From IMG/VR virus record IMGVR_UViG_3300005826_000294, positions 62,001 through 126,000 of that record: 64,000 nt of DNA, one strand, 5' to 3'. The position numbers and the translations under genes were made by a program. The notes beneath the pieces are model-generated. The model did no database searches. It had not been told where the DNA came from and saw only the letters and a list, made by a program, of their open reading frames with translations. This document shows positions 5,151 through 37,732 of this stretch, one piece after another. Numbering within the stretch: position 1 is the stretch's first letter; every line of letters begins with the position of its first letter.

Positions 5151-6094
5151 ATATTTTTTCCTATAGTTCCACCAGAATGGTTTAATAAATAATCTTCACG
5201 GTTACATCTATAACTATATGTAATTACTTTTAAAATTGAAAAATAAGTTTTTAAATATTCTTGTATTGTAATTTGTGGACTAAAACCAAGAAACGAATTT
5301 TCAATAATATTATCTATAACTAATATATTTTTAAAATAAGGAATAGCTTTAGCATTTGAATTAGAAGTTATTAAAAAGGTATTTAATTTATTAAACTTTT
5401 TATATAATGATTTCATCATATTTATTAATTCTTCAGTATCTCCAGATTTGGAAGAAGCAATAACAATATCATTTATATTAATTAGTCCTAAACTTCCATG
5501 AGAACTATGATTAGCATCTAAAGGAACAGCAACAATATTATAAGGAAGAAAAAATTCACTAACCAATTGAGCCAAAGAAAAATTCTTACCAACCCCAGTA
5601 ATTACTATTTTTCCAGAAATAGAATCTCTTATTTTTTTAGCAAAACTTAATATATTTTCTTTTCTTATCCAATTTAATATATGAGGAAAAACATTTTTTC
5701 CAGCTAATGTGGGCAATATAAAATCAGAATTATTTTTTGCTTGTGGTGTTGAATCATTTAAACAAAGATTTATTAAAGCATTAGGTTCATTAATTCCATC
5801 TCCAACATATACACAAGGCATATTTTCATCTATAAGTTTTTGTCTTTCTTCAACTTTACTAAAAATATAGTTAATTCCCATTTCTTTACATCTTATTTCA
5901 TTAATTTTAGATCCAGAAGATGTATTATCTGCAGAACATAATATTATTTCATTAAAATATTTCTTTAGAATAGGAATTGAAGGCCGATCATTACTACTAA
6001 AAGATTTTACTATTTTTCCATCAATTGAATAAAAATGCTCACCAGATGTTATTATTCCATCTATATCACAGATTAATTTCATTATTTTCTCCAC
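5147..6094 (-). CDS. KdsC-like HAD phosphatase fused to KdsD/GutQ-like SIS sugar-phosphate isomerase
   Basis: CDIDGIITSG and YVGDGINE (HAD); KIVITGVGK...HGSLG...SSKSGDTEE (SIS); no CBS domains. Confidence 0.8.
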   Translation of the reverse strand: MEKIMKLICDIDGIITSGEHFYSIDGKIVKSFSSNDRPSIPILKKYFNEIILCSADNTSSGSKINEIRCKEMGINYIFSKVEERQKLIDENMPCVYVGDGINEPNALINLCLNDSTPQAKNNSDFILPTLAGKNVFPHILNWIRKENILSFAKKIRDSISGKIVITGVGKNFSLAQLVSEFFLPYNIVAVPLDANHSSHGSLGLININDIVIASSKSGDTEELINMMKSLYKKFNKLNTFLITSNSNAKAIPYFKNILVIDNIIENSFLGFSPQITIQEYLKTYFSILKVITYSYRCNREDYLLNHSGGTIGKNI

Positions 6095-7227
6095 TTAATG
6101 TTTGGAACTATAATAGAACTATCTATTTTACTTTTAAATGGAATTAGATCTTTAAACATACTTTTTAGTTCTTCTAACATATCAGATGTAGGTTTATAAC
6201 CTAAATTTAAAAGAATATTATGATCAACATTATACTCATGATCTTCCTTTTCAATTCTTGGATTTTCTATATTTGAGATTGTTGTTTCAATTCCAAATTC
6301 TTTTGCTACAATAGAAACATTTTTAGCAAGTTCAGATAGATCATAAATCTCTTCAAATTGATTAATAATCCTATATTTACCATTTTTTGGAGGATTATCA
6401 ATAATAATAGAAATACATTGTATTGAATCTCTTAAAGGAAGAAATCCTCTTTTTTGATGACCTTTTCCAAATAAAGTAATAGGAAATCCTTTAATAGCTT
6501 GAACAACAAAACGATTAATTGCAGTACCAAAAATACCATCATAATCAAATCTTGTTTTAAATTCACTAAATTCTATGTCACCTATATTAGTACCATAAAC
6601 AACACCCTGCATAATATCAGTACAAGTTATTCCCCAAATACGATTAGCAAAATCTATATTTATACTATCATGAACTTTTGTAGCATGATAGAAACTTCCA
6701 GGAAGTCTAGGAAACATCACCCTATCTTTTTTATTTTTATATTCTATCTCAAAGAAACCTTCTGCGATAGGAATATTAGGAGTTCCAAATTCGCCCATTG
6801 AACCAAGCTTAATTAAATGAATTTCTGGACAAACTTCATAAATAGCATAAAGAAGTGATAAATTGCCAATAACATTATTAAAATGAGTAAAAGAAGCATG
6901 CTTAAAATCAATCATAGAATATGGTGCAGATGGAATTTGACCTAAATTTACTATAACATCAGGCTTAAATTTTATTAAAGCAGATTTGAGAAAATTAAAA
7001 TTAGTCATATCAAATTTTAATATTTCTATTTCTCCAATAAATCTGCGAAAAACTTTTTGTCTTTTTGATATAGAAGATATTGGAATTAAAGAATTTCCTC
7101 CAAATTTTTTTACAAATTTTCTTCTGCTTAAATTATCTATTCCAAATATCTTATGTCCTTTACACCCTAAAAATTGAGCTAAAGGCCATCCTAAATATCC
7201 ATCAATTCCACAAATTAAAACTCTCAC
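6082..7227 (-). CDS. sqdB: UDP-sulfoquinovose synthase
   Basis: GIDGYLGWP, GIDNLSRR, LIKLGSMGEFGTP, PGSFYHATKVHDS, TDIMQGVVYG, RFDYDGIFGTAINRF, QKRGFLPLRDSIQC; GTG start at 7227 (GTGA overlap). Confidence 0.9.
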   Translation of the reverse strand: MRVLICGIDGYLGWPLAQFLGCKGHKIFGIDNLSRRKFVKKFGGNSLIPISSISKRQKVFRRFIGEIEILKFDMTNFNFLKSALIKFKPDVIVNLGQIPSAPYSMIDFKHASFTHFNNVIGNLSLLYAIYEVCPEIHLIKLGSMGEFGTPNIPIAEGFFEIEYKNKKDRVMFPRLPGSFYHATKVHDSINIDFANRIWGITCTDIMQGVVYGTNIGDIEFSEFKTRFDYDGIFGTAINRFVVQAIKGFPITLFGKGHQKRGFLPLRDSIQCISIIIDNPPKNGKYRIINQFEEIYDLSELAKNVSIVAKEFGIETTISNIENPRIEKEDHEYNVDHNILLNLGYKPTSDMLEELKSMFKDLIPFKSKIDSSIIVPNIKWRK

Positions 7228-7928
7228 AAATTCTCCCATCTATCTATTTTACAACTATGATAATTTACCTTATCTAAAGTTTCATATTCATCAGTTAATA
7301 TAATATTACATCCACACATTAAACCTAAATCAGCCATTCCACTAGCAGGAGTTATAAATACCTCGGAATTATTTAATACATTTATTTGATGATAAATATC
7401 ACGACAAAAATCAATATTTAAATTAAATCTTTCATTTTCTAAACCATGACCCATAATTTTTTTATTTGGAAATTTATATTTAAGCCATTTTATATGATCC
7501 CTGCCTGTTATATTTTTATTAGGTTGAATTTTACGATTTCGTGGAAAAATGGAAACAAATTTTTTTTCTTCAAATTGCTCACCATACATTAATTTTGGTT
7601 TAACTAAATTATATACTTTTCTAACATTATCATAAAAAAATCTATTATTTTTATCAAAATTAAAACAATGAGAAAATCCCATTTCTATAAATTTTTTATT
7701 TATATTATCATCTCTATAATGATTACAATCTCTAAGACTTTCATTAATATTATTAATAAATAATTCTACAGAGATCATATTAAATCTTCCAGGCCATAAT
7801 ATATGTAAAATTCTAACTAGTGAATCCCAAGTTAGAATTTCAAGAGGCTTGTTATATTGTTCTAAAAATGGAAATAATTGCCTAAATCCAAAACCATATT
7901 CCCCAATAAAATATAACTTATCTACCAT
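7224..7928 (-). CDS. putative GT-B glycosyltransferase (weak GT9-like), paralog of 2298-3002
   Basis: Co-linear similarity to 2298-3002 (FVSIFPRNRKIQPNKN vs YISIFPRKRSIRPKKN; FITPASGMADLGLMCGCNIIL). Confidence 0.5.
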   Translation of the reverse strand: MVDKLYFIGEYGFGFRQLFPFLEQYNKPLEILTWDSLVRILHILWPGRFNMISVELFINNINESLRDCNHYRDDNINKKFIEMGFSHCFNFDKNNRFFYDNVRKVYNLVKPKLMYGEQFEEKKFVSIFPRNRKIQPNKNITGRDHIKWLKYKFPNKKIMGHGLENERFNLNIDFCRDIYHQINVLNNSEVFITPASGMADLGLMCGCNIILTDEYETLDKVNYHSCKIDRWENL

Positions 7929-9382: not shown

Positions 9383-10699
9383 TTATTTTTGTTCATCAAA
9401 ATCATTTTCCCAAATAAAAACAATTTTATATCCTGCAGTTTTTATTAAGTTTTCTCTTTTAATTGTATTTTCATAAAGAGTACCATATGTTTTTTTATTT
9501 ATAGGATTTATTTCATTTTTGCTATAAATTTTTGGATTCCCATGCCAAAAATCACCATAAAATTCATAAACTATATTTTCAATTAATGCATCAACATAAA
9601 ATTTCTTTTTATTTATAATAATACAAATTTCTCTATTAGATAAATCTATATTTAGTCGGTCTAGCCATAAATTACATTTTTTTGATGAATTTAAATGTTT
9701 TACACAAACTGGACATCCAGCAATCTGACTTCTACTATTAACAGTGGCAAACCAAGAATGATTATTTTTACACTTCCACCACACTTTCTTTGAACTATGT
9801 GGAGTAACATCATATGGAGTTATAGAATTTTTTTTAAAATCCCACTCTAATGCTAAATCTGGGTTTATTGTAAATAAACAATTATCAATACAAACTTTTT
9901 TATTTGAACAATATGGACAATTTGTTCCAAAACTGCGATGGCTCACTGAAGTCTTCCAAGAATGGTTGTTTTTACATTTCCACCAAATTTTTTTTGAACT
10001 ATATGGGGTAACATCATGTGGAGTTATAGAGTTTTTTATATAATCCCACTCTAATACTAAATCTGGATTTATTGTAAATAAACAATTATCAATACAAACT
10101 TTTTTATTTGAACAATATGGACATCCATCTTCACGACATGTTCTATTACATAGAGGAGAATACCAAGAATGATTATTCTTACATTTCCACCAAACTTTCT
10201 TATTAGATTTACTATGAATCATAGAGGGTAAAATTATATTTTTATTATAGTCCCACTCACATAATAATTCTGGATTTCTTATTTTTAAATTATTTATATC
10301 ATTTACAATCTTGCCAGAACAACATGGGCAACCATGATTAGTTCTACTATTTGGAGAATTTTTCCACTCGTATCCACATTTACATTTCCACCAAACTTTT
10401 TTGTTGCTTTTTGCTGTAATTTCATTAGTCTTAATTATATTTTTTTTGCTCCACTCCTTGGCAAGATTATGAGCTTTTACTAATAAAGAATTTTCCAAAC
10501 ATACACGCTGTCCAGAACAATATGGACATCCATCCCCACGAGATATTCTTTTATCAATTGGTGCAAACCAAGAATGATTATTTTTACATTTCCACCAAAC
10601 TTTTTTTGAACTTCCGATTGTAATGTTTTCTGGAAAAATATTATTTTTTATAAAGTCCCACTCACTTACAATACTAAACTCCGAAACCTTAGGTTTCAT
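9383..10699 (-). mobile_element. zinc-ribbon repeat protein with C-terminal PD-(D/E)xK/Vsr-like nuclease; probable free-standing homing endonuclease
   Basis: Five KK[VI]WWKC...W...CP.C repeats; C-terminal FYVDALIENIVYEFYGDFWHGNP...GYKIVFIWE. Confidence 0.75.
9841..10123. repeat. 79-bp direct repeat (9841-9919 and 10045-10123), 204-bp offset
   Basis: Manual alignment shows 2 mismatches in 79 nt. Confidence 0.9.
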
Positions 10700-12878
10700 T
10701 ATCTTCTTCCTTTTTAGAATTTACACCTAAAAGTTTACAATCATAATCTACCATACGTTTAACTAACTCTTCAAACTTTACTTTAGGTTCCCACCCAATA
10801 AGTTCTGTTGTTTTAGAATAATCTCCACAGAGATCATTTACTTCGGCAGCTCGCATATAAAACCTATCAATTTCTACATAATCTTCCCAATTTAATCCAA
10901 CATGACCAAAAGCAATTTCGCAAAACTCTTTAACTGAGTGAGTCTCTCCCGTTGCAAATATATAATCATTTGGTTTAGGTTGTTGAAGAGTCATAATAAA
11001 ACCCTCACAATATTCTTTGGCTAACCCCCAATCTCGTCTTGCATTTAAATTACCCAACTTTAACTTAAAACTTGGATTTTTAAGAGCCTGTGCTACACCC
11101 ATAGATATTTTTCTAGTTACGAAATTTGGGCCTCTTCTCCCCGGTTCTTCATGGTTGAACGTTACTCCAGCACAACAATACATATTATATGATTCTCTAT
11201 ACAATCTTATAAAATGATGACTAGCAACCTTAGCTATCGCATATGGACTTTGTGGCATATAAATAGTTTCAGTATTTTGAGGAGCAGGAGAAGAACCAAA
11301 CATTTCACTAGTATTGTGAACTAAGATTGGAGACACACCACAATACCATTTTTCAGTATCCTTAACTGAAAAATCACCAACACGCTGATGTATATGAAGT
11401 TTTTCTATTTGTTGTATTTTTTCCATATTAATATCTGAATTTTCAAAATGGCACAAATTTTCTCCAGAGATATTTTTTATATTAATATCTTTCTTTTGTA
11501 TTTTATAACTAGAGAAGTTATGTAACTCATCCTTTGAAATTATAATATCCCAAACTAAAGAATCTTTAGTTAGTATTTGTTGTGGCAATAAGAATGATTT
11601 AACAAATCTATTATGTAAATGCCCACCAATACCAATTAATCTTAATAACCATAATATATCAATTGCCAAATCCTTATATATAGTTGTATATTTTATTTCT
11701 CTTTCATCTATTTTAGCGCCTCCTAAATAACCATTTAAAAAAGAAATCTTTACACTTGTTGAAGATTCATATAATTCACTAGGTAATCTTTTAGAATGAG
11801 AATTATTTTCAGCATATTTAGAAAAAAAAGAACAAATTTTTCTTTTACATATGGACACTTGAGTAGAATTTTTTTTAATCCTAATATTACTCTTATATTT
11901 AAAATATTTTTCAATTATATTTTTAGTTTCTTCTGATCTATTACAATTAAAAGCATGGTTGCTAAATGTTAAAGTTATACTTTCATTTCCATGACTTTTA
12001 GAATAATATCCTTCTGCCATATAAATTCCTAATAAATATGCTATTTCTTCATTTAATAAAATACTTTCATTAAATTTACTATTTAAAATTTTAGTTCCCT
12101 TATTTCGCTCTACTTTATGTTTTAAAAAAAAATCCCATTTTAGTTTCTTATATTTATCATGTTTGTAAAAATCTTCTTGATTACAAAAAGTTATTAAATG
12201 GTCACCAACAGATAAATCCGAAACTTTAGTTTCAACAAACCTATTATTATATAAAGTAATCAAAGAATGATCTGGAGTCACAATTAAATCTTTTCCCCCA
12301 GAAAAACTAATTTTATAAACTTGTTTAAATCCATGATCAACAACATCCATTACTTGCTTAAAACATGTTTTTCCATCATTATCAGCTGTTAAAACCTCAA
12401 ACGAATTATGTTCGCCCTTCTTCCATAAATTAAAAGCATTTTCTAATGTAGTTCTATTCAACACTCCATTATATTTAATTAATACCGGAGTATTAAAAAC
12501 TATTGAACTCGCATGAAAAATTCTTGTAGAATAACCTAACAATTTAATACTTTCTAAAATATTAACAACTCCTTTTGTATCGATATCTAATGTAGCTAAT
12601 GGTTGTTCAAAACTCGTATGAACGTGAGACATTGCTGCCATATTATATAATTCATGAGGACGAGTATCTCGAACGATGCGTAACATTGAAGACATATCAG
12701 TAATATCACCTTCAAAAATATCAATCTTATTTTCCAAATGAACTACATTGCCAAAATTATTGGTTGCATTTCTTCTCATTACACCAATTACATTATATTC
12801 CTTTTCTAATAATAAATCGGCTAATAAACTTCCATCTTGGCCACAAATTCCTATTATTAATGCAGTTTTTTTCTTCAT
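10689..12878 (-). CDS. gmd: GDP-mannose 4,6-dehydratase interrupted by an intein
   Basis: GICGQDGSLLA, YNMAAMSHVHTSF, IFHAS[intein]TSEMFG, PQSPYAIAK, FNHEEPGRRGPNFVTRKI, LGNLNARRDWG; spliced length 331 aa. Confidence 0.95.
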   Translation of the reverse strand: MKKKTALIIGICGQDGSLLADLLLEKEYNVIGVMRRNATNNFGNVVHLENKIDIFEGDITDMSSMLRIVRDTRPHELYNMAAMSHVHTSFEQPLATLDIDTKGVVNILESIKLLGYSTRIFHASSIVFNTPVLIKYNGVLNRTTLENAFNLWKKGEHNSFEVLTADNDGKTCFKQVMDVVDHGFKQVYKISFSGGKDLIVTPDHSLITLYNNRFVETKVSDLSVGDHLITFCNQEDFYKHDKYKKLKWDFFLKHKVERNKGTKILNSKFNESILLNEEIAYLLGIYMAEGYYSKSHGNESITLTFSNHAFNCNRSEETKNIIEKYFKYKSNIRIKKNSTQVSICKRKICSFFSKYAENNSHSKRLPSELYESSTSVKISFLNGYLGGAKIDEREIKYTTIYKDLAIDILWLLRLIGIGGHLHNRFVKSFLLPQQILTKDSLVWDIIISKDELHNFSSYKIQKKDINIKNISGENLCHFENSDINMEKIQQIEKLHIHQRVGDFSVKDTEKWYCGVSPILVHNTSEMFGSSPAPQNTETIYMPQSPYAIAKVASHHFIRLYRESYNMYCCAGVTFNHEEPGRRGPNFVTRKISMGVAQALKNPSFKLKLGNLNARRDWGLAKEYCEGFIMTLQQPKPNDYIFATGETHSVKEFCEIAFGHVGLNWEDYVEIDRFYMRAAEVNDLCGDYSKTTELIGWEPKVKFEELVKRMVDYDCKLLGVNSKKEEDNET
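11313..12506 (-). mobile_element. intein (398 aa) with degenerate LAGLIDADG endonuclease
   Basis: Starts SIVFNTPVL, block B TPDH, block C YLLGIYMAEGY, block E FLNGYLGGAK, block F VGDFSV, ends LVHN followed by Thr. Confidence 0.93.
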
Positions 12879-13795
12879 TAAAGTCCCCGTAAATTTGGAT
12901 AATTTTTAATAAACCATTTATATGTTTTTTCTAAACCAGTAAAAAGTGTAGTAAATTTTATATCATTTTTTATTAAATTTTTAAATTTTGTTGTATCAGA
13001 TGGTTTTTTAAATTGTCCTTCTGGCATATTAGTATTAAAAACTATGTTACCATTATATTCAACAACTTTTTTAATATTTTTAACAAGTTCATTAATAGAA
13101 TATTCTTTATTATATCCAATATTAATAGGTTCCTCTTCATTATAATGTTCCATTACATAAATCATACAATCAGCAATATCAGATGAATATGTAAATTCTC
13201 TCATACAATTTCCAGAACCCCAAATTTCTATCTCATTTAAATTATTAAGTTTTGCTTCATGAAATCTTAACATTAATGCTGGAATTACATGACAACCATA
13301 TCCATACTGATCATTTGGACCATATATATTATTTGGGATCACACAAACAAAATTACATCCATATTGTTTTCTATATACTCTTGATTGAACATCAAGCATT
13401 CTTTTTGTAAAAGCATATGAAAAATTTGATTGATGAGGAAAACCATTATGTAATTGGTCTTCTGTTAATGGATAGTTTACATTATCTGGATAAACACAAG
13501 TACTTAAAACAGATATAACCTTTTTTACTTCTGTTTTATAACATGCATCTAAAACATTTGAATTTATTCTTATATTTTGTATATAAAATTCTGCTAGATA
13601 TTTAGAATTTTCTAAAACACCTCCAACACGAGATGCAAGATGAAAAACTATATCTGGTTTATTTTTTAACATAAAAGATAATACTTTTTCACTATTTTCT
13701 AAATCTAATTCTTTTCTTGTAGGGCAAATTGAATATATTTTTTTTCTTAATGCTCTTCCTAACATTCCATGTCCACCAGTAATTACGACTTTCAT
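12878..13795 (-). CDS. fcl: GDP-L-fucose synthase
   Basis: ITGGHGMLG, HLASRVGGV, STCVYP, YAFTKR, PNNIYGPND, WGSGNCMREFTY; adjacent to gmd. Confidence 0.92.
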   Translation of the reverse strand: MKVVITGGHGMLGRALRKKIYSICPTRKELDLENSEKVLSFMLKNKPDIVFHLASRVGGVLENSKYLAEFYIQNIRINSNVLDACYKTEVKKVISVLSTCVYPDNVNYPLTEDQLHNGFPHQSNFSYAFTKRMLDVQSRVYRKQYGCNFVCVIPNNIYGPNDQYGYGCHVIPALMLRFHEAKLNNLNEIEIWGSGNCMREFTYSSDIADCMIYVMEHYNEEEPINIGYNKEYSINELVKNIKKVVEYNGNIVFNTNMPEGQFKKPSDTTKFKNLIKNDIKFTTLFTGLEKTYKWFIKNYPNLRGL

Positions 13796-13811: not shown

Positions 13812-14639
13812 TTAAAAAATTTCATGACTAATAATAACTTTTGGATCTCCCCAAATATGATCTGTATTTGCTATATAATTATAATTTTTTAAATTTTCTC
13901 GCATTAATAAAAGATTTTTATCTCTCATTTCTTTTTCTGTGTATCGTAAAATATGTTTTTTTGTATTTAAATTTGAATGATCTTGATGAATTCCAATTAT
14001 ATTATGTTCAAAAACAGGAGTAACTCCAAACATTTTCATTCGATTAGAAAAATCATCATCTTCAGCACAAAACCCTTCACCAAATCTTTCATCTATTCCT
14101 CCTATTTTTTCTACATATTCTTTCTTAACAACACAAAAATAATAATAAGCAGGTGGATGAGGAGGTCTAGTTAAACAATTATTTTTTGCACCTGGAAGTT
14201 TTAATAAACCATCAAATGATTTATTCCAATTTTTATTGATAATATCAATAAAAATACTATTTGACTTATATACTAATCCATATCCACATTGTTTTCTATT
14301 AATAAATGAAGATGCTACTTTTATATTATTTTTATTTTGAAGGGTTTCTGGGCCAGTTATACAAACAATATTACTTCTAGCCATTCTCATTCCAACATTA
14401 TTACTTAATACAGGAGTAAATGTTGTAATTGGAACATCACATTTAGAATTATCTATTTGAATATATTGGAAGTTTAAGTTAGGATAATTATTACATAATT
14501 CTCTTATATCTTGCCTATTTCCATCATCAATAAGAACGAGTTCAAAATCTTTTTCTGTTTGATTATTCCAAGTATCAAGAGCGCGATTAAAATAAGAAAA
14601 TCTATTATCACATAAAGATATTACCACTGAAACTTTCAT
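13812..14639 (-). CDS. GT2-family glycosyltransferase, paralog of the C-terminal domain of 29847-31358
   Basis: FELVLIDDG, NNVGMRMARS, GGIDERFGEGFCAEDDDF; shared ITGPETL and GIHQDH motifs. Confidence 0.85.
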   Translation of the reverse strand: MKVSVVISLCDNRFSYFNRALDTWNNQTEKDFELVLIDDGNRQDIRELCNNYPNLNFQYIQIDNSKCDVPITTFTPVLSNNVGMRMARSNIVCITGPETLQNKNNIKVASSFINRKQCGYGLVYKSNSIFIDIINKNWNKSFDGLLKLPGAKNNCLTRPPHPPAYYYFCVVKKEYVEKIGGIDERFGEGFCAEDDDFSNRMKMFGVTPVFEHNIIGIHQDHSNLNTKKHILRYTEKEMRDKNLLLMRENLKNYNYIANTDHIWGDPKVIISHEIF

Positions 14640-34765: not shown

Positions 34766-37732
34766 TCAACTTTTTATCCACTCATCTATCCAGCCGTGGC
34801 AATCAACACGATACTCTGAAAATGCAGCTTCTCGGAAATAATCTACTTGTTTTGTAGTTGTTGGAGTCGCAATTAATCCCCTACTATGAGCTGCTTCTCC
34901 ACCAGCATTTCCACCTAACCGAAATGTAGATGTATTCCAAAGAGTTGTTCCACTTGAAGAATCACCTTCTCCATTAACAAAAAAGTAAGAAGTGCTTGCA
35001 GAATTAACCTGAATATAGGCTTGTAAAATAGCATATGAAGCGGTCGCTGGAATATGATCAACAAGTGATAAAGTCTGTATTGATACATCTGCTGAGCCAC
35101 CCCCTGTAAATCCTCCAGTAGGTTGGCTTTGTGTAGCATAACTAAATTGTTGCCCACTTTGGAATACTTTTGCCAGATTACCACTACCATCAATATAATC
35201 CGCCCATAAATACTCAAAATTAGAATATCCAGCCGGACCAGTAGAAGGTGGATTATCACTGGCTCTAATGCTCAATATATTATCATCCCCACTAGATGGT
35301 ACAGCATACCAATATAGCCATTTGCTGTTTCCTTGAGATCCAGCTTCATCATATCCAAGATCTGCAATTCCTGTTGCAACTGCCCAATTAAGGGTTCCTA
35401 TAACTGTTCGTTGTTTCCCATCCTGTAGAGTTAATTTAACAGTAGAAGGTTGCCCTGAATATGCCAAAAAATCCACGGTAGTTACTGTTTGCCATATTCC
35501 CTTAAATGGTTTTGTATCTGGCAAGTATGGTGCTTGGGCTCGCGCCTCGTTGGCTCCCGGATACAGGGCGTTTCGATACCCGGCAAGTTGGATGGTCCAG
35601 GTCGATGAAACCGACTGGCCGAACTGCACCGCCAGTTCGCGTGCAGGGCACGCCATCCTTCTGGCGGCGCTGTAAGAACTATTCGTCGCAAATCGCTGAG
35701 TGTAGGGTTGTGCTGATGCTGCGGTCCAACTCGGTGCGGCTTCCGCAGCCAGCCACAACTGCTGATTGGTGGAAGAAACAATTCCGTGGACGTCTATCTC
35801 ATCAGCACTTTCTGGCATCAAAGCCCGCAGAGCGGTGGTCTTGTCCACCCAGGAACCGACCGTCCCAGGAACCGCCGAATCCCCAGAGTCGAGTGTGTAG
35901 GCCGTTAGATCTTTGGCCAGCGGCTCGTACCACCCACCCTCGGTCATCAGGAACTCTTCAAGCACCACAGGTCCCGTAGAAGTCACCCGCACCGTCCACA
36001 GGTAGCGGTATACGGAGAAGCTCGGTGGCCCCGAGGTTCCCGGCACCGCATCTTTGGACAGCACAAGCTTAGCCCTCGTGACGTCGGTGTCGCTCTCGAC
36101 CGCGAATAGGTGATAGAGGTCCCCCGCCGATTCGGCCGTGGCATCACCCGTGTCACGGCCACCAATGCCGTCCGTGTCGATGTCACACGTCAGAGGCAGG
36201 CTCGCTTTGCGCCGGACGCCATCGTTGAACAGGAGCCGCATCTCGGAGTCAGCACCGATGGCGGCGGTAGCGTTGATGAGCGATGTATCAGAGCTGTCTC
36301 GTGCAAAGACGGGTGTGTTTTCGGGATGGACGTAGCCACCGCGAATTTGACGTATCGCCGAACGAGACGTAAAGGACAATCCACCAAATGTGGTCGCCCC
36401 AAAGACCGTGCCAGATCCAGCGTCGTGGTATTCACCGAGATCTATCGTATTCGAGCCAGAACTGAGATCTAACTCTACTACGCCAGACAGTGGCGTCCAG
36501 TAGCCGGATACAGCTGACGCACCTTCCAGGGGGACCCAGCTTCCGGAATTTACACGATAAGCCAATGTGCGTGTCGCTGTGGAAGAACTAGAAATGATCA
36601 CAGAATACGTTAGGGCGAGTCTTTCCCCTTCGATAATGGTGACCGTGTGAGATAGACCAGTAATGATATTCCATGCTGAGGCAGACAACCCGGTTTGATC
36701 GCTTGATAGAGCTGCCGATGAAACCTCTACCCCCCCGGCAACACCATTGAACTCTACGTTCGCGGTGCCTCCAACGTTGGTCACCGAGACGTTGGGACCC
36801 ACGTAGTTGACCGCTGCGGGCTTGTCGATGATGTTGACGCCATCATGGCGTATGGGGACCAGGCCGCCTCTATTTTGATCAACGTCAATCCAAGATCCGG
36901 CCTTGATGCTCCAGCTCTGCGAAGTGAAGGTCGCTGCATACAGCTCTAGCGTGTGCGAGCCCGCGTCGACCTGCACAGAGAAACTGTCATTAAGAGGACC
37001 TTGATAAGTAGTATTCGGGAGCACCTCTGATAAAACGTTCCCAATCAAGGTGCCATCAAGACGAAGCTGCAGGTATACAGTGTTAGCACCTGTTCCACTT
37101 GCCCCCTGAACATGCAGTCCAACCCGGACAGTCTCGTCCTGGGTCGACTCAAACGTCACGCTCATCGGCTCCGTGGGGACGGGCGACAGTGATGTGGCCG
37201 TGATTGTCCGGTCAGCGCTCTGGATGAACTTGTTTGGTGCTAGGTTTCCACCTGCACCAGAACCACTAACAGCAACAAGCTCTAACCGAGGAGCCTGAAC
37301 CGGATTCGACGACGACCCAAGAACCTGGAGACCCGTCCCATTTATCTCTTTTGCGTAGGCCGTGACCGTGTGTGTCCCCGCAGATAGTTCAACCTCTCCA
37401 AACCATACGCTGGAGTCAAAGTTTGTTATCACACGGATTTGCCATTCGTCATCGTAACCTACCACTATAGGAGTTCCAGCTTCATCAAAAACTAATTTGA
37501 TTTGTCCAGTAGTGGCCGACACGGCATTGAATTGGCAACCGAACATGATCCGGTATAGACCAGAGAACGGAACCTCAAAGCTCATGCTGGCTTCGTCTTC
37601 CGGCATGATCTTGGTGTCCGTGGCTCCTATGGATATCGTGTTTACGGGCTGGCCGTCGCTGATTGCAATTCGGATCCCTGGAGCAGTGATGATCGCGTCA
37701 GAAATCTGGTCTACTTTTATAGATCTACTCAT
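34766..37732 (-). CDS. multi-domain fibre/receptor-binding-like virion protein, mostly GC-rich
   Basis: 988 aa, Ser/Thr/Gly/Ala-rich; three similar beta-sandwich units and two copies of a second domain; lies at the end of the structural block. Confidence 0.6.
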   Translation of the reverse strand: MSRSIKVDQISDAIITAPGIRIAISDGQPVNTISIGATDTKIMPEDEASMSFEVPFSGLYRIMFGCQFNAVSATTGQIKLVFDEAGTPIVVGYDDEWQIRVITNFDSSVWFGEVELSAGTHTVTAYAKEINGTGLQVLGSSSNPVQAPRLELVAVSGSGAGGNLAPNKFIQSADRTITATSLSPVPTEPMSVTFESTQDETVRVGLHVQGASGTGANTVYLQLRLDGTLIGNVLSEVLPNTTYQGPLNDSFSVQVDAGSHTLELYAATFTSQSWSIKAGSWIDVDQNRGGLVPIRHDGVNIIDKPAAVNYVGPNVSVTNVGGTANVEFNGVAGGVEVSSAALSSDQTGLSASAWNIITGLSHTVTIIEGERLALTYSVIISSSSTATRTLAYRVNSGSWVPLEGASAVSGYWTPLSGVVELDLSSGSNTIDLGEYHDAGSGTVFGATTFGGLSFTSRSAIRQIRGGYVHPENTPVFARDSSDTSLINATAAIGADSEMRLLFNDGVRRKASLPLTCDIDTDGIGGRDTGDATAESAGDLYHLFAVESDTDVTRAKLVLSKDAVPGTSGPPSFSVYRYLWTVRVTSTGPVVLEEFLMTEGGWYEPLAKDLTAYTLDSGDSAVPGTVGSWVDKTTALRALMPESADEIDVHGIVSSTNQQLWLAAEAAPSWTAASAQPYTQRFATNSSYSAARRMACPARELAVQFGQSVSSTWTIQLAGYRNALYPGANEARAQAPYLPDTKPFKGIWQTVTTVDFLAYSGQPSTVKLTLQDGKQRTVIGTLNWAVATGIADLGYDEAGSQGNSKWLYWYAVPSSGDDNILSIRASDNPPSTGPAGYSNFEYLWADYIDGSGNLAKVFQSGQQFSYATQSQPTGGFTGGGSADVSIQTLSLVDHIPATASYAILQAYIQVNSASTSYFFVNGEGDSSSGTTLWNTSTFRLGGNAGGEAAHSRGLIATPTTTKQVDYFREAAFSEYRVDCHGWIDEWIKS

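What the first reader, a model, noticed from the sequence alone, without database searches (positions are those of the whole stretch)
11313..12506. Ser1/Thr+1 intein at the catalytic threonine of GDP-mannose 4,6-dehydratase
Seen: IFHAS|SIVFNT...LVHN|TSEMFG; removing 398 aa restores AS-TSE and a 331-aa Gmd. The second LAGLIDADG motif (FLNGYLGGAK) lacks the acidic residue. Known: this Thr belongs to the Gmd catalytic triad; most inteins sit in DNA replication/recombination proteins and start with Cys. Inference: fucose supply depends on splicing, which could act as a switch, and the endonuclease is probably inactive.
Basis: partly seen in the sequence, partly recalled or inferred. Interest (0 to 1): 0.65.

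Follow-up and report, generated by a model that had tools for sequence, protein, structure and literature searches.

The report
Intein splitting a phage fucose-pathway enzyme
A self-splicing protein insert (an intein with a decaying homing endonuclease) sits exactly at the catalytic threonine of the GDP-mannose dehydratase gene of an uncultured jumbo phage. It is real, but it belongs to a family of Gmd inteins already plentiful in public sequence data, so it is best read as an ordinary selfish element and not a demonstrated switch.

Summary
The ORF at window 10689-12878 (-) is a 729-aa Gmd. A 398-aa class-1 intein (11313-12506) interrupts it between Ser124 and the catalytic Thr of the A-S-T-S-E loop. 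Every splicing residue conserved in the family is present: Ser1, T77-x-x-H80, D378, H397-N398 and Thr+1. The AlphaFold model matches endonuclease-bearing inteins (TliVMA, PI-PkoII, PI-PfuI).

LAGLIDADG motif 2 has Gly263 where 8 of 11 family members and PI-PkoII have the catalytic Asp.

The host is a ~300-kb tailed jumbo phage with a large glycan-synthesis cluster and at least four more intein-like inserts in three other genes.

The novelty claim fails. Among the 120 best long Gmd homologues, 84 carry large insertions at four or more conserved sites, and 18 of these are at or next to this site. The same Ser1...HN|T/S lineage occurs in syntenic phage contigs, one of which carries three inserts in its gmd. 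It also occurs in Chloroflexota and Micrarchaeota MAGs. Close relatives (74% and 65% C-extein identity) have uninterrupted gmd.

Nothing supports a regulatory switch. No paper in the searchable library describes Gmd inteins. Verdict: new member of a known kind, modest interest.

The parts
10689..12878 (-). gmd precursor ORF: 729 aa plus stop, made of N-extein, intein and C-extein
   Evidence: ORF. PF16363 327 bits. TIGR01472 315 bits, in two stretches; best solved relative is Arabidopsis MUR1 Gmd, E 2.9e-84.
12507..12878 (-). N-extein, 124 aa. Rossmann part with GICGQDG, ending ...RIFHAS.
   Evidence: PF16363 profile 1-128, E 6.1e-35..
11313..12506 (-). 398-aa class-1 intein with an inserted LAGLIDADG endonuclease domain
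   Evidence: AF2 pLDDT 83.8, pTM 0.85. Foldseek hits 7qsu E 1.9e-21, 2cw7, 1dq3, PI-SceI.
12504..12506 (-). Ser1, the N-terminal splicing nucleophile (block A)
   Evidence: Invariant in alignment A1.
12267..12278 (-). Block B, T77-P-D-H80 (the TxxH motif)
   Evidence: T77, D79 and H80 are invariant in A1.
12009..12035 (-). LAGLIDADG motif 1, LLGIYMAEG, with the acidic Glu165 present
   Evidence: Aligned to LLGYYVSEG of PI-PkoII.
11712..11741 (-). LAGLIDADG motif 2, FLNGYLGGAK. Gly263 (codon 11718-11720) replaces the catalytic Asp.
   Evidence: consensus GYLGDA, with Asp in 8 of 11 members; aligned to the GDGD of PI-PkoII..
11364..11381 (-). Block F, VGDFSV, with the invariant Asp378
11313..11324 (-). 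Block G, LVHN: penultimate His397 and terminal Asn398
11310..11312 (-). Thr+1. It is the C-extein nucleophile and at the same time the catalytic Thr of the Gmd T-S-E motif.
   Evidence: Intein-free relatives read HAS-TSEMFG without interruption.
10689..11312 (-). C-extein, 207 aa plus stop. TSEMFG..., with YAIAK (YxxxK) at 11229-11243.
   Evidence: PF16363 profile 129-332, E 6.5e-62..
12878..13795 (-). Upstream gene whose stop overlaps the gmd start: GDP-L-fucose synthase-like (Fcl), the next enzyme of the pathway
   Evidence: NF047922 264.8 bits, best family but below the 500-bit cut-off.. Synteny with L011, L012, L036 and L038.
13812..14639 (-). Family-2 glycosyltransferase of the same conserved cassette (GT2 - Fcl - Gmd)
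   Evidence: 72% identity to L036 and 49-52% to L011, L012 and L038.

Best explanation
This is a bona fide class-1 intein carrying a LAGLIDADG homing-endonuclease domain. It is inserted in frame in the gmd gene of an uncultured ~300-kb tailed jumbo phage, between Ser124 and the catalytic Thr of the A-S|T-S-E loop. It is a selfish homing element of a Gmd-specific, Ser1-type lineage that circulates among jumbo-phage glycan cassettes and some Chloroflexota and DPANN genomes. It persists because it excises itself at the protein level. The inferred mechanism has four steps. (1) An N-O acyl shift at Ser1, helped by block B Thr77 and His80. (2) Trans-esterification onto the hydroxyl of Thr+1. (3) Cyclisation of Asn398, helped by His397 and Asp378, which releases the intein. 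(4) An O-N shift that forms the Ser-Thr peptide bond. The product is a 331-aa Gmd with an intact T-S-E / YxxxK active site. With the adjacent Fcl-like gene it would convert GDP-mannose to GDP-L-fucose for the phage's glycosyltransferases. The endonuclease has lost one of its two catalytic acidic residues (Asp to Gly263). It is therefore probably inactive or at most a nickase, as expected for an element past its invasive phase. What is shown: the anatomy, the conserved residues, the fold, homologues at the same site, intein-free orthologues, and synteny. What is inferred: that splicing really happens and is constitutive, that the enzyme makes GDP-4-keto-6-deoxymannose, and that the endonuclease is impaired.
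For: Coordinates and the contiguous Gmd profile are. Intein profiles score above their curated cut-offs. In alignment A1 of 11 inteins at or one codon from this site (7 at the same junction), S1, T77, D79, H80, D378, H397 and N398 are invariant and all are present here. The AF2 model has pLDDT 83.8. Its Foldseek hits are TliVMA intein (E 1.9e-21, TM 0.69/0.75), PI-PkoII (TMq 0.73), PI-PfuI, PI-SceI and I-DmoI for the endonuclease part. For motif 2, the family consensus is GYLGDA against GYLGGA here, aligned to the catalytic Asp of PI-PkoII. The distribution is patchy. Intein-free gmd with HAS-TSEMFG is found in related 318-kb and 340-kb viral contigs L011 and L012 (C-extein identity 74% and 65%). 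L012 (no intein) and P0003 (intein) have 88% identical C-exteins. The GT2-Fcl-Gmd cassette is syntenic in L011, L012, L036 and L038, with 0, 0, 3 and 1 inteins respectively. The phage nature rests on Baseplate_J, an IMG/VR virus record and a distant match to Bacillus phage G. The same genome has four more intein-like inserts, in the RNR, in DNA polymerase III alpha and twice in a 1409-aa ORF. The intein's GC3 (0.133) is close to that of the exteins (0.17 and 0.19), so it is not a compositionally foreign recent import.
Against: No experiment or proteomic data show splicing. Ser1/Thr+1 inteins use oxy-ester chemistry only and can be slow or temperature dependent, so constitutive efficient splicing is an assumption. 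The Pfam LAGLIDADG_3 match is below its cut-off (20.6 bits against 22.5). Loss of one acidic residue does not prove loss of all nuclease activity. The record is about 75% complete and carries a 'provirus' flag, and neither the host nor the use of fucose is known. TIGR01472 (315 bits, cut-off 415) and the Fcl model (264.8 bits, cut-off 500) both score below their equivalog cut-offs. For Gmd this is at least partly because the profile is split by the intein.
Confidence: 0.8

Rival explanations
1. Conditional protein splicing. The intein is kept because it holds Gmd inactive until some infection-stage or environmental cue (temperature, pH, substrate) triggers splicing, so that it times GDP-fucose supply.
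For: The insertion splits the catalytic loop and uses the catalytic Thr as the +1 nucleophile, so the precursor is very probably inactive. The endonuclease is decaying while the splicing residues are all kept. That would be compatible with retention for a reason other than homing. Conditional splicing is documented for some inteins; this is established knowledge and was not tested here.
Against: Keeping the splicing residues while the nuclease decays is also exactly what the standard homing cycle predicts, because a non-splicing intein would kill the host gene. Close relatives do without the intein (L011, L012). Others carry three inteins in the same gene (P0002). Inteins of unrelated lineages hit the same loop. 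This is the pattern of parasitism on conserved sites, not of a conserved regulator. Ser1 and Thr+1 offer no thiol for the known redox traps.
Confidence: 0.07
2. A dead insertion. The element no longer splices and gmd is a pseudogene in this phage.
For: There is no direct evidence of splicing. The endonuclease motif is degenerate. The site-c motif of this Gmd is also unusual: NHE-EPG-RRG where relatives read NHE-SE-RRG.
Against: The 729-codon frame is open, and the chance of this for the intein part alone is about 1e-16. All seven family-invariant splicing residues are present. The extein keeps GxxGxxG, T-S-E and YxxxK and is 70-74% identical to an intact orthologue. Its start overlaps the stop of Fcl, as in an operon.
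Confidence: 0.05
3. The endonuclease is still active. This is an alternative only to the sub-claim that it is impaired. The element would still home, for example as a nickase or with a neighbouring residue (Asp267 or Glu268 in GGAKIDERE) substituting for the lost Asp.
For: Motif 1 keeps Glu165. The endonuclease domain is full length and confidently folded, with pLDDT mostly 80-95 over residues 150-330. Acidic residues lie four or five positions after Gly263. Single-site LAGLIDADG variants that nick DNA are known from engineered enzymes; this is established knowledge and was not tested here.
Against: Asp is present at this column in 8 of 11 family members and in PI-PkoII. The two other members that lack it (P0002, P0023) also have Lys in place of the motif-1 Glu, and P0002 has a shortened domain, so loss at this column goes with other signs of decay.
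Confidence: 0.2

Closest known systems
Metagenomic Gmd inteins of the same lineage at the same junction: P0002, P0003, P0004, P0012, P0014, P0019, P0021. In Chloroflexota and Micrarchaeota MAGs (e.g. contigs WFWG01000298.1, DAOTXX010000177.1, QMVG01000032.1) the lineage sits one codon downstream.
   Same: Same host protein and same loop. They share the Ser1 start S[IV]xF[DN]TPV, block B T-x-D-H-S, the ending P-I-L-x-H-N, a Thr or Ser at +1, and a LAGLIDADG domain. Identity is 41-54% to the four closest. P0002 and P0003 lie in the same GT2-Fcl-Gmd cassette.
   Different: The nearest relative is only 54% identical (P0002). This copy has Gly instead of Asp in motif 2. The cellular copies sit one codon further on (QASS|SE), so they use the next Ser, not the catalytic residue, as +1.
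PI-PkoII (Thermococcus kodakarensis Pol-2 intein, PDB 2cw7), TliVMA intein (7qsu/7qss) and PI-PfuI (1dq3)
   Same: All are bifunctional inteins: a HINT splicing domain plus a double-motif LAGLIDADG endonuclease. They are the best structural matches (E 1.9e-21 to 9.5e-18, TMq 0.69-0.73) and PI-PkoII is the best sequence match among solved structures (E 2.8e-11).
   Different: They are archaeal and sit in DNA polymerase, V-ATPase or RNR. Identity is only 14-17%. PI-PkoII is a characterised nuclease (established knowledge) and has Asp in both motifs in the alignment. The present intein lacks the second acidic residue and sits in a sugar-nucleotide enzyme of a phage.
Other intein alleles in Gmd: site a (AAM|SHV), site c (NHE|S-x-RRG, the commonest) and site d
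   Same: Same host protein. Each sits at a conserved motif and uses a conserved Ser as the +1 nucleophile. Their junctions look like inteins: C/S/T...[GH]N|S.
   Different: They occupy different positions and mostly belong to different intein lineages: Cys1 at site c, and a Cys1...GN|S lineage at or next to site b. None is present in the window's gene.
Archaeal UDP-glucose/GDP-mannose dehydrogenase intein (UDP-GlcDH, 10 inteins in the survey of Novikova et al. 2016, PMC4760082)
   Same: It is an intein in a nucleotide-sugar enzyme and not in a replication protein. It is the nearest case I found in the searchable literature.
   Different: The enzyme family and the host domain of life are different. 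That survey does not list Gmd.

Membership tests
Class-1 intein (HINT splicing domain) | In-frame insertion in a conserved host protein whose profile continues without loss across the insert | tested here: met
   PF16363 profile 1-128 matches before the insert and 129-332 after it. Intein-free orthologues read HAS-TSEMFG.
Class-1 intein (HINT splicing domain) | Nucleophile (Cys or Ser) at intein position 1 | tested here: met
   Ser1, invariant in the 11-member alignment A1.
Class-1 intein (HINT splicing domain) | Block B TxxH | tested here: met
   T77-P-D-H80. T77, D79 and H80 are invariant.
Class-1 intein (HINT splicing domain) | C-terminal His-Asn followed by a Cys, Ser or Thr at +1 | tested here: met
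   H397-N398 followed by Thr+1.
Class-1 intein (HINT splicing domain) | Match to curated intein profiles above their cut-offs | tested here: met
   PF14890 scores 55.6 bits (cut-off 35.8). TIGR01445 scores 30.1 bits (cut-off 24.5).
Class-1 intein (HINT splicing domain) | HINT fold | tested here: met
   AF2 model with pLDDT 83.8. Foldseek probability 1.00 to the TliVMA, PI-PkoII, PI-PfuI and PI-SceI inteins and to the TFIIB mini-inteins.
Class-1 intein (HINT splicing domain) | Actual protein splicing (ligated exteins plus free intein) | not testable with these tools
   Needs expression and protein analysis.
Double-motif LAGLIDADG homing endonuclease | Two LAGLIDADG helices within an alpha-beta-beta-alpha-beta-beta-alpha duplicated fold | tested here: met
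   Motifs at intein residues 158-166 and 256-265. The model matches I-DmoI with TMt 0.64-0.71. The Pfam LAGLIDADG_3 match is only 20.6 bits, below the 22.5 cut-off.
Double-motif LAGLIDADG homing endonuclease | Acidic metal-binding residue at the end of each motif | tested here: not met
   Motif 1 has Glu165. Motif 2 has Gly263 where 8 of 11 relatives and PI-PkoII have Asp. It is therefore filed as a LAGLIDADG-derived domain and not as an active enzyme.
Double-motif LAGLIDADG homing endonuclease | Site-specific cleavage of the intein-free allele | not testable with these tools
   Candidate target sequences exist (L011, L012) but cleavage needs an assay.
GDP-mannose 4,6-dehydratase (extended SDR) | Family profile match | tested here: inconclusive
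   PF16363 scores 327 bits, far above its cut-off of 27. TIGR01472 is the best equivalog model, but at 315 bits it is below its 415-bit cut-off because the match is split in two by the intein. The best solved relatives are all Gmd.
GDP-mannose 4,6-dehydratase (extended SDR) | GxxGxxG cofactor motif and the catalytic Thr, Glu, Tyr-xxx-Lys set | tested here: met
   GICGQDG is near the N terminus. T-S-E lies directly after the intein. YAIAK is at precursor residues 546-550. The set is complete only after removal of the intein.
GDP-mannose 4,6-dehydratase (extended SDR) | Pathway partner (GDP-L-fucose synthase) nearby | tested here: inconclusive
   The adjacent overlapping gene hits NF047922 GDP-L-fucose synthase best (264.8 bits, E 1.1e-78), but below the 500-bit cut-off.
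GDP-mannose 4,6-dehydratase (extended SDR) | Enzyme activity on GDP-mannose | not testable with these tools
   Needs an assay of the spliced protein.

The most novel reading that the evidence does not exclude
The most novel reading not excluded is as follows. In this jumbo-phage lineage, Gmd inteins at the catalytic loop are retained after their endonuclease decays because slow or condition-dependent oxy-ester splicing (Ser1/Thr+1) acts as a post-translational timer. The timer would delay GDP-fucose production, and hence virion or host-surface glycosylation, to a particular stage of infection. A weaker but more likely novelty is that Gmd is an unrecognised intein hot spot: four or more insertion sites, up to three inteins in one gene, and several independent lineages on one catalytic loop. 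This extends beyond the replication and repair network on which the literature concentrates.
Probability: 0.07. Interest if true: 0.7.

Novelty: new member of a known kind. Interest (0 to 1): 0.3.

Why it matters
For annotation: the gene should be called an intein-containing gmd, not a 729-aa fusion or a pseudogene, and the phage should be credited with a probable GDP-fucose pathway.

For intein biology: the window is one example of a larger pattern that I could not find in the papers I was able to search. Gmd, a sugar-nucleotide enzyme, carries inteins at several active-site motifs in jumbo phages, candidate-phyla bacteria and Chloroflexota. Related contigs carry 0, 1 or 3 inteins in the same cassette. 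That natural series could serve to study homing, endonuclease decay and intein loss outside replication genes. A Ser1/Thr+1 intein from a very AT-rich, presumably mesophilic phage might also interest protein engineers.

None of this makes the single finding surprising to a specialist.

Tried and rejected
- Giant eukaryotic virus or cellular origin. I considered this because of the 25% GC and the DUF4379 zinc-finger neighbour. I rejected it: the record holds Baseplate_J, DNA polymerase III alpha and an RNR, its genes are packed on one strand, and it is an IMG/VR virus record.
- Rfam and tRNA scans of the window found nothing.
- tblastn of the intein against 50,697 deposited phage genomes gave no match. 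Deposited phages do carry gmd (cyanophages, Sulfolobus filamentous viruses), but at 51% C-extein identity or less.
- Population polymorphism (intein-less reads in the source sample). The look-up of sequencing runs listed no run. None was listed, which is not the same as none existing.
- Literature. The searches 'intein' + 'GDP-mannose' and 'intein' + 'jumbo phage' found no description of a Gmd intein. One search term was malformed. The GMD/RMD structure paper PMC4381037 is not held, so the E. coli Thr133 numbering rests on established knowledge plus the alignment.
- The region-restricted word search with the intein found only four close relatives plus weak FlaI inteins. More distant family members came from the whole-protein search and from the alignment-based locus scans.
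- The costly exhaustive representative search was not run.
- The C-terminal domain of the DUF4379 neighbour could not be assigned by Pfam.
- Spliced model. The two exteins were searched only separately and by reference. The joined 331-aa sequence was not sent to any search, fold or alignment tool. It was concatenated only inside scripts, where one search also printed it in full in that script's output, to count residues and show context. The joined-model fold and search were left out.
- A script error was corrected.
Full report
**Observation**

The window (G000:C1:62001-126000 of a 301,683-bp IMG/VR virus record) has a 729-aa ORF on the minus strand at 10689-12878. Residues 125-522, which are window 12506 down to 11313, form the insert SIVFNT...PILVHN. 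It is flanked by ...RIFHAS and TSEMFG.... The insert is 398 aa and the two flanks together are 331 aa.

The Pfam Gmd profile PF16363 is matched at positions 1-128 by the N flank and at 129-332 by the C flank, so the host protein continues without loss across the insert. The insert matches Intein_splicing (55.6 bits, cut-off 35.8) and TIGR01445 (30.1 bits, cut-off 24.5). At 24.6% GC, a 398-codon frame free of stops has a chance probability near 1e-16.

**What the host gene and genome are**

The best solved relatives of both flanks are GDP-mannose 4,6-dehydratases: Arabidopsis MUR1 at E 2.9e-84, then the Aquifex, Pseudomonas, human and E. coli enzymes. The flanks keep GICGQDG, T-S-E and YAIAK. 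In the alignment to E. coli Gmd (1db3, a 372-residue chain), the +1 Thr falls at chain position 132. This is consistent with the catalytic Thr133 of the literature numbering if the chain lacks Met1; that last step is my inference from established knowledge.

The gene's start overlaps the stop of a GDP-L-fucose-synthase-like gene at 12878-13795. NF047922 is that gene's best hit at 264.8 bits, below the equivalog cut-off. A GT2 glycosyltransferase lies beyond it.

The surrounding 30 kb is a glycan-synthesis cluster. It holds a dTDP-glucose dehydratase (374.8 bits, above cut-off), a UDP-sulfoquinovose-synthase-like protein, a sugar aminotransferase, nucleotidyltransferases, KdsD/KdsC-like domains, an O-methyltransferase and several glycosyltransferases.

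The record is a tailed jumbo phage. It has Baseplate_J, a baseplate protein whose nearest cultured match is Bacillus phage G at 29% identity, a DNA polymerase III alpha and an RNR. The genes are tightly packed on one strand, and no rRNA or tRNA lies in the window.

**What the insert is**

Eleven homologous inteins at or one codon from this junction were aligned (A1). Seven splicing-related residues are invariant across them, and all are present here:
- Ser1
- Thr77, Asp79 and His80 (block B, TxxH)
- Asp378 (block F)
- His397 and Asn398 (block G)

The +1 residue is Thr or Ser throughout.

An AlphaFold model built on A1 is confident (pLDDT 83.8, pTM 0.85). Foldseek places it with endonuclease-bearing inteins: TliVMA 7qsu (E 1.9e-21, TM 0.69/0.75), PI-PkoII 2cw7 (TMq 0.73), PI-PfuI 1dq3 and PI-SceI. 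The central domain also matches I-DmoI.

The endonuclease motifs are LLGIYMAEG (Glu165 kept) and FLNGYLGGAK. At the latter, the family consensus is GYLGDA, with Asp in 8 of 11 members. The HMMER alignment to PI-PkoII puts Gly263 opposite the Asp of its GDGD motif. Whether the nuclease is dead, or only a nickase, cannot be decided here.

**Comparative evidence**

A whole-protein search restricted to proteins of 400-1275 aa returned 193 hits. I mapped the 120 listed hits onto the two extein pieces, kept separate. Of these, 84 carry at least one insertion of 120 aa or more. The tally was:

| Site | Junction | Insertions |
|---|---|---|
| c | NHE\|S-x-RRG | 58 |
| b | the A-S-T-S-E loop | 18 |
| a | AAM\|SHV | 8 |
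| d | near extein residue 226 | 3 |
| other | | 2 |

The junctions at sites a and c look like inteins: [C/S/T]...[H/G]N|S.

At site b there are at least three lineages:
- The Ser1...P-I-L-x-H-N|T/S lineage to which the window's intein belongs: P0002, P0003, P0004, P0012, P0014, P0019 and P0021. P0022-25 are shifted one codon downstream.
- A Cys1...G-N|S lineage: P0033 and P0081. P0034, P0084, P0094 and P0102 are shifted one codon upstream.
- P0104.

The four closest inteins are 41-54% identical to the window's.

An alignment-based scan of one genome per prokaryotic species found full-length members of the Ser1 lineage in gmd of Chloroflexota MAGs (Ardenticatenaceae, Anaerolineae, Thermoflexales, Chloroflexaceae) and of a Micrarchaeota MAG. 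All of these have the junction QASS|S...HN|SEMFG. More distant Ser1 relatives sit in an archaeal gene whose junction NA|S...HN|SDERG I recognise from memory as the replication-factor-C motif, and in other proteins.

Some of these carry NCBI names as plain "GDP-mannose 4,6-dehydratase". I found no paper describing them. The large survey of Novikova et al. (PMC4760082) lists a UDP-glucose/GDP-mannose dehydrogenase intein but not Gmd.

**Mobile-element behaviour**

Related viral contigs carry the same GT2-(methyltransferase)-Fcl-Gmd cassette with different intein loads:
- L011 (318 kb) and L012 (340 kb) have uninterrupted gmd of 329-330 aa reading HAS-TSEMFG or QAS-TSELWG.
- L038 (P0003) has one intein at this site. 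Its contig also encodes a tubulin and a GIY-YIG endonuclease.
- L036/L037 (P0002) has three insertions in the one gene, at sites a, b and c.
- L039 (P0012) lies on a 348-kb contig with UvsW-like and DnaB-like helicases.

The window's exteins are 74%/70% (C/N) identical to intein-free L011. Intein-free L012 and intein-bearing P0003 share 88%/76% extein identity. Presence and absence thus alternate among close relatives, as expected for gain by homing and occasional loss.

The intein's GC3 (0.133) resembles that of its exteins (0.17 and 0.19), so it is not a fresh import from a compositionally different donor. The same phage genome has further intein-like inserts:
- in its RNR (NP|C...N|CGE)
- in its DNA polymerase III alpha (GRG|C...HN|S; PF14890 below cut-off)
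- twice in a 1409-aa ORF

**Mechanism and rivals**

The best-supported reading (confidence about 0.8) is a standard class-1 intein. It would splice through an N-O acyl shift at Ser1, trans-esterification to Thr+1, Asn398 cyclisation and an O-N shift. This restores a 331-aa Gmd that works with the Fcl-like neighbour. The endonuclease is in decay, with Asp replaced by Gly263. Anatomy, conservation, fold and distribution are shown. Splicing, enzyme activity and nuclease impairment are inferred.

Relatives live without the intein or with three. Several unrelated inteins target the same loop. Conserved splicing residues alongside a decaying nuclease are what a purely selfish element predicts. I give it about 0.07.

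A non-splicing pseudogene is unlikely (about 0.05), given the open frame and the intact invariant residues. Independently of these, I give about 0.2 to the possibility that the nuclease still works.

**Limits**

- No sequencing run was listed for the gene, so allele polymorphism in the source sample could not be examined and read laying was not used.
- The two exteins were searched only separately and by reference. The joined, spliced sequence was not submitted to any search, fold or alignment tool. Scripts concatenated it only to count residues and show context, and one search printed it in full in its own output. The fold and search of the joined model were left out.
- The exhaustive representative search was not run, because no conclusion rests on the absence of relatives.

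**Verdict**

This is a real, correctly delimited intein and a new member of a known kind. Interest is modest (0.3). The wider pattern of Gmd as a multi-site intein host in jumbo phages and some bacterial phyla is the part worth a short follow-up.

Noticed in passing
G000:C1:39726-43112 (L067), 225834-230063 (L068), 254109-258857 (L069); outside the window: The same phage genome carries at least four more intein-like inserts. One is in the ribonucleotide reductase (PF14890 45.1 bits; junction NP|C...N|CGE). Two are in a 1409-aa ORF whose host protein Pfam does not name (LAGLIDADG_3 85 bits plus a second Hint module). One is in DNA polymerase III alpha (GRG|C...HN|S; PF14890 only 25.3 bits, below cut-off).
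   Followed up: partly
L036:6284-10114 and L037:3396-7226 (protein P0002): A closely related gmd (extein 73-82% identical, same GT2-MT-Fcl-Gmd cassette) carries three large insertions in one 1276-aa ORF, at sites a, b and c. The junctions at all three sites look like inteins. The site-b intein has both LAGLIDADG motifs degenerate and a shortened endonuclease domain.
   Followed up: partly
L052-L060 (Chloroflexota and Micrarchaeota MAG contigs); proteins P0021 versus P0022-P0025: The same Ser1 intein lineage sits one codon further downstream in cellular gmd genes (QASS|S...HN|SEMFG) than in P0021 and the phage copies (QAS|S...HN|[ST]SEMFG). This is a one-codon shift within a run of Ser codons, and it changes which residue serves as the +1 nucleophile.
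   Followed up: partly
window 11133-11156 (-), motif FNHEEPGRRG: At intein site c, the window's Gmd reads NHE-EPG-RRG where relatives read NHE-SE-RRG (P0003 reads NHE-GP-RRG). The Ser that serves as the +1 nucleophile for the very common site-c inteins is missing. This could be a homing-resistant allele or a scar of intein loss. That is speculation and was not tested.
   Followed up: no
window 9383-10699 (-): A 438-aa ORF with five DUF4379 treble-clef zinc-finger repeats (281.9 bits) and an unassigned C-terminal domain overlaps the end of gmd. In the related cassettes L036 and L038 a GT2 gene follows gmd directly, so this ORF may be an inserted, possibly mobile, gene. From memory, its C-terminal motif resembles Vsr/DUF559-type nucleases, but Pfam did not confirm this.
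   Followed up: partly
window 34766-37732 (-): A 988-aa ORF lies in a stretch of 39-52% GC, in a genome of about 30% GC. It is rich in Ser, Thr, Gly and Ala and has no Pfam match. It sits next to tail and baseplate genes, so it may be a horizontally acquired or fast-evolving fibre or receptor-binding protein.
   Followed up: no
window 6082-7239 (-) and about 1-31000 generally: The phage carries an unusually large sugar-nucleotide and glycosyltransferase cluster. It includes a UDP-sulfoquinovose-synthase-like protein (NF041015, 501.7 bits, cut-off 575), a dTDP-glucose 4,6-dehydratase (above cut-off), a PseC/WecE-like aminotransferase, KdsD/KdsC-like domains, a GSCFA protein and a sugar O-methyltransferase-like protein.
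   Followed up: partly
L040:1654-2997 and L041:3001-4344 (viral contigs): A distant Ser1...HN|S relative of this intein family (22% identity, full length) interrupts an 847-aa ORF. The flanks (...STYFGHSM | STIEGGMVCTDD...) look to me like a DegT/DnrJ-type sugar aminotransferase. If so, this is another sugar-modifying enzyme with an intein in viruses. The host protein was not verified with a profile search.
   Followed up: no
L038:10951-12360 and 2068-2898: The contig with the closest single-intein gmd relative (P0003) also encodes a tubulin-family protein (PF00091) and a free-standing GIY-YIG/NUMOD3 endonuclease inside its sugar cluster.
   Followed up: no
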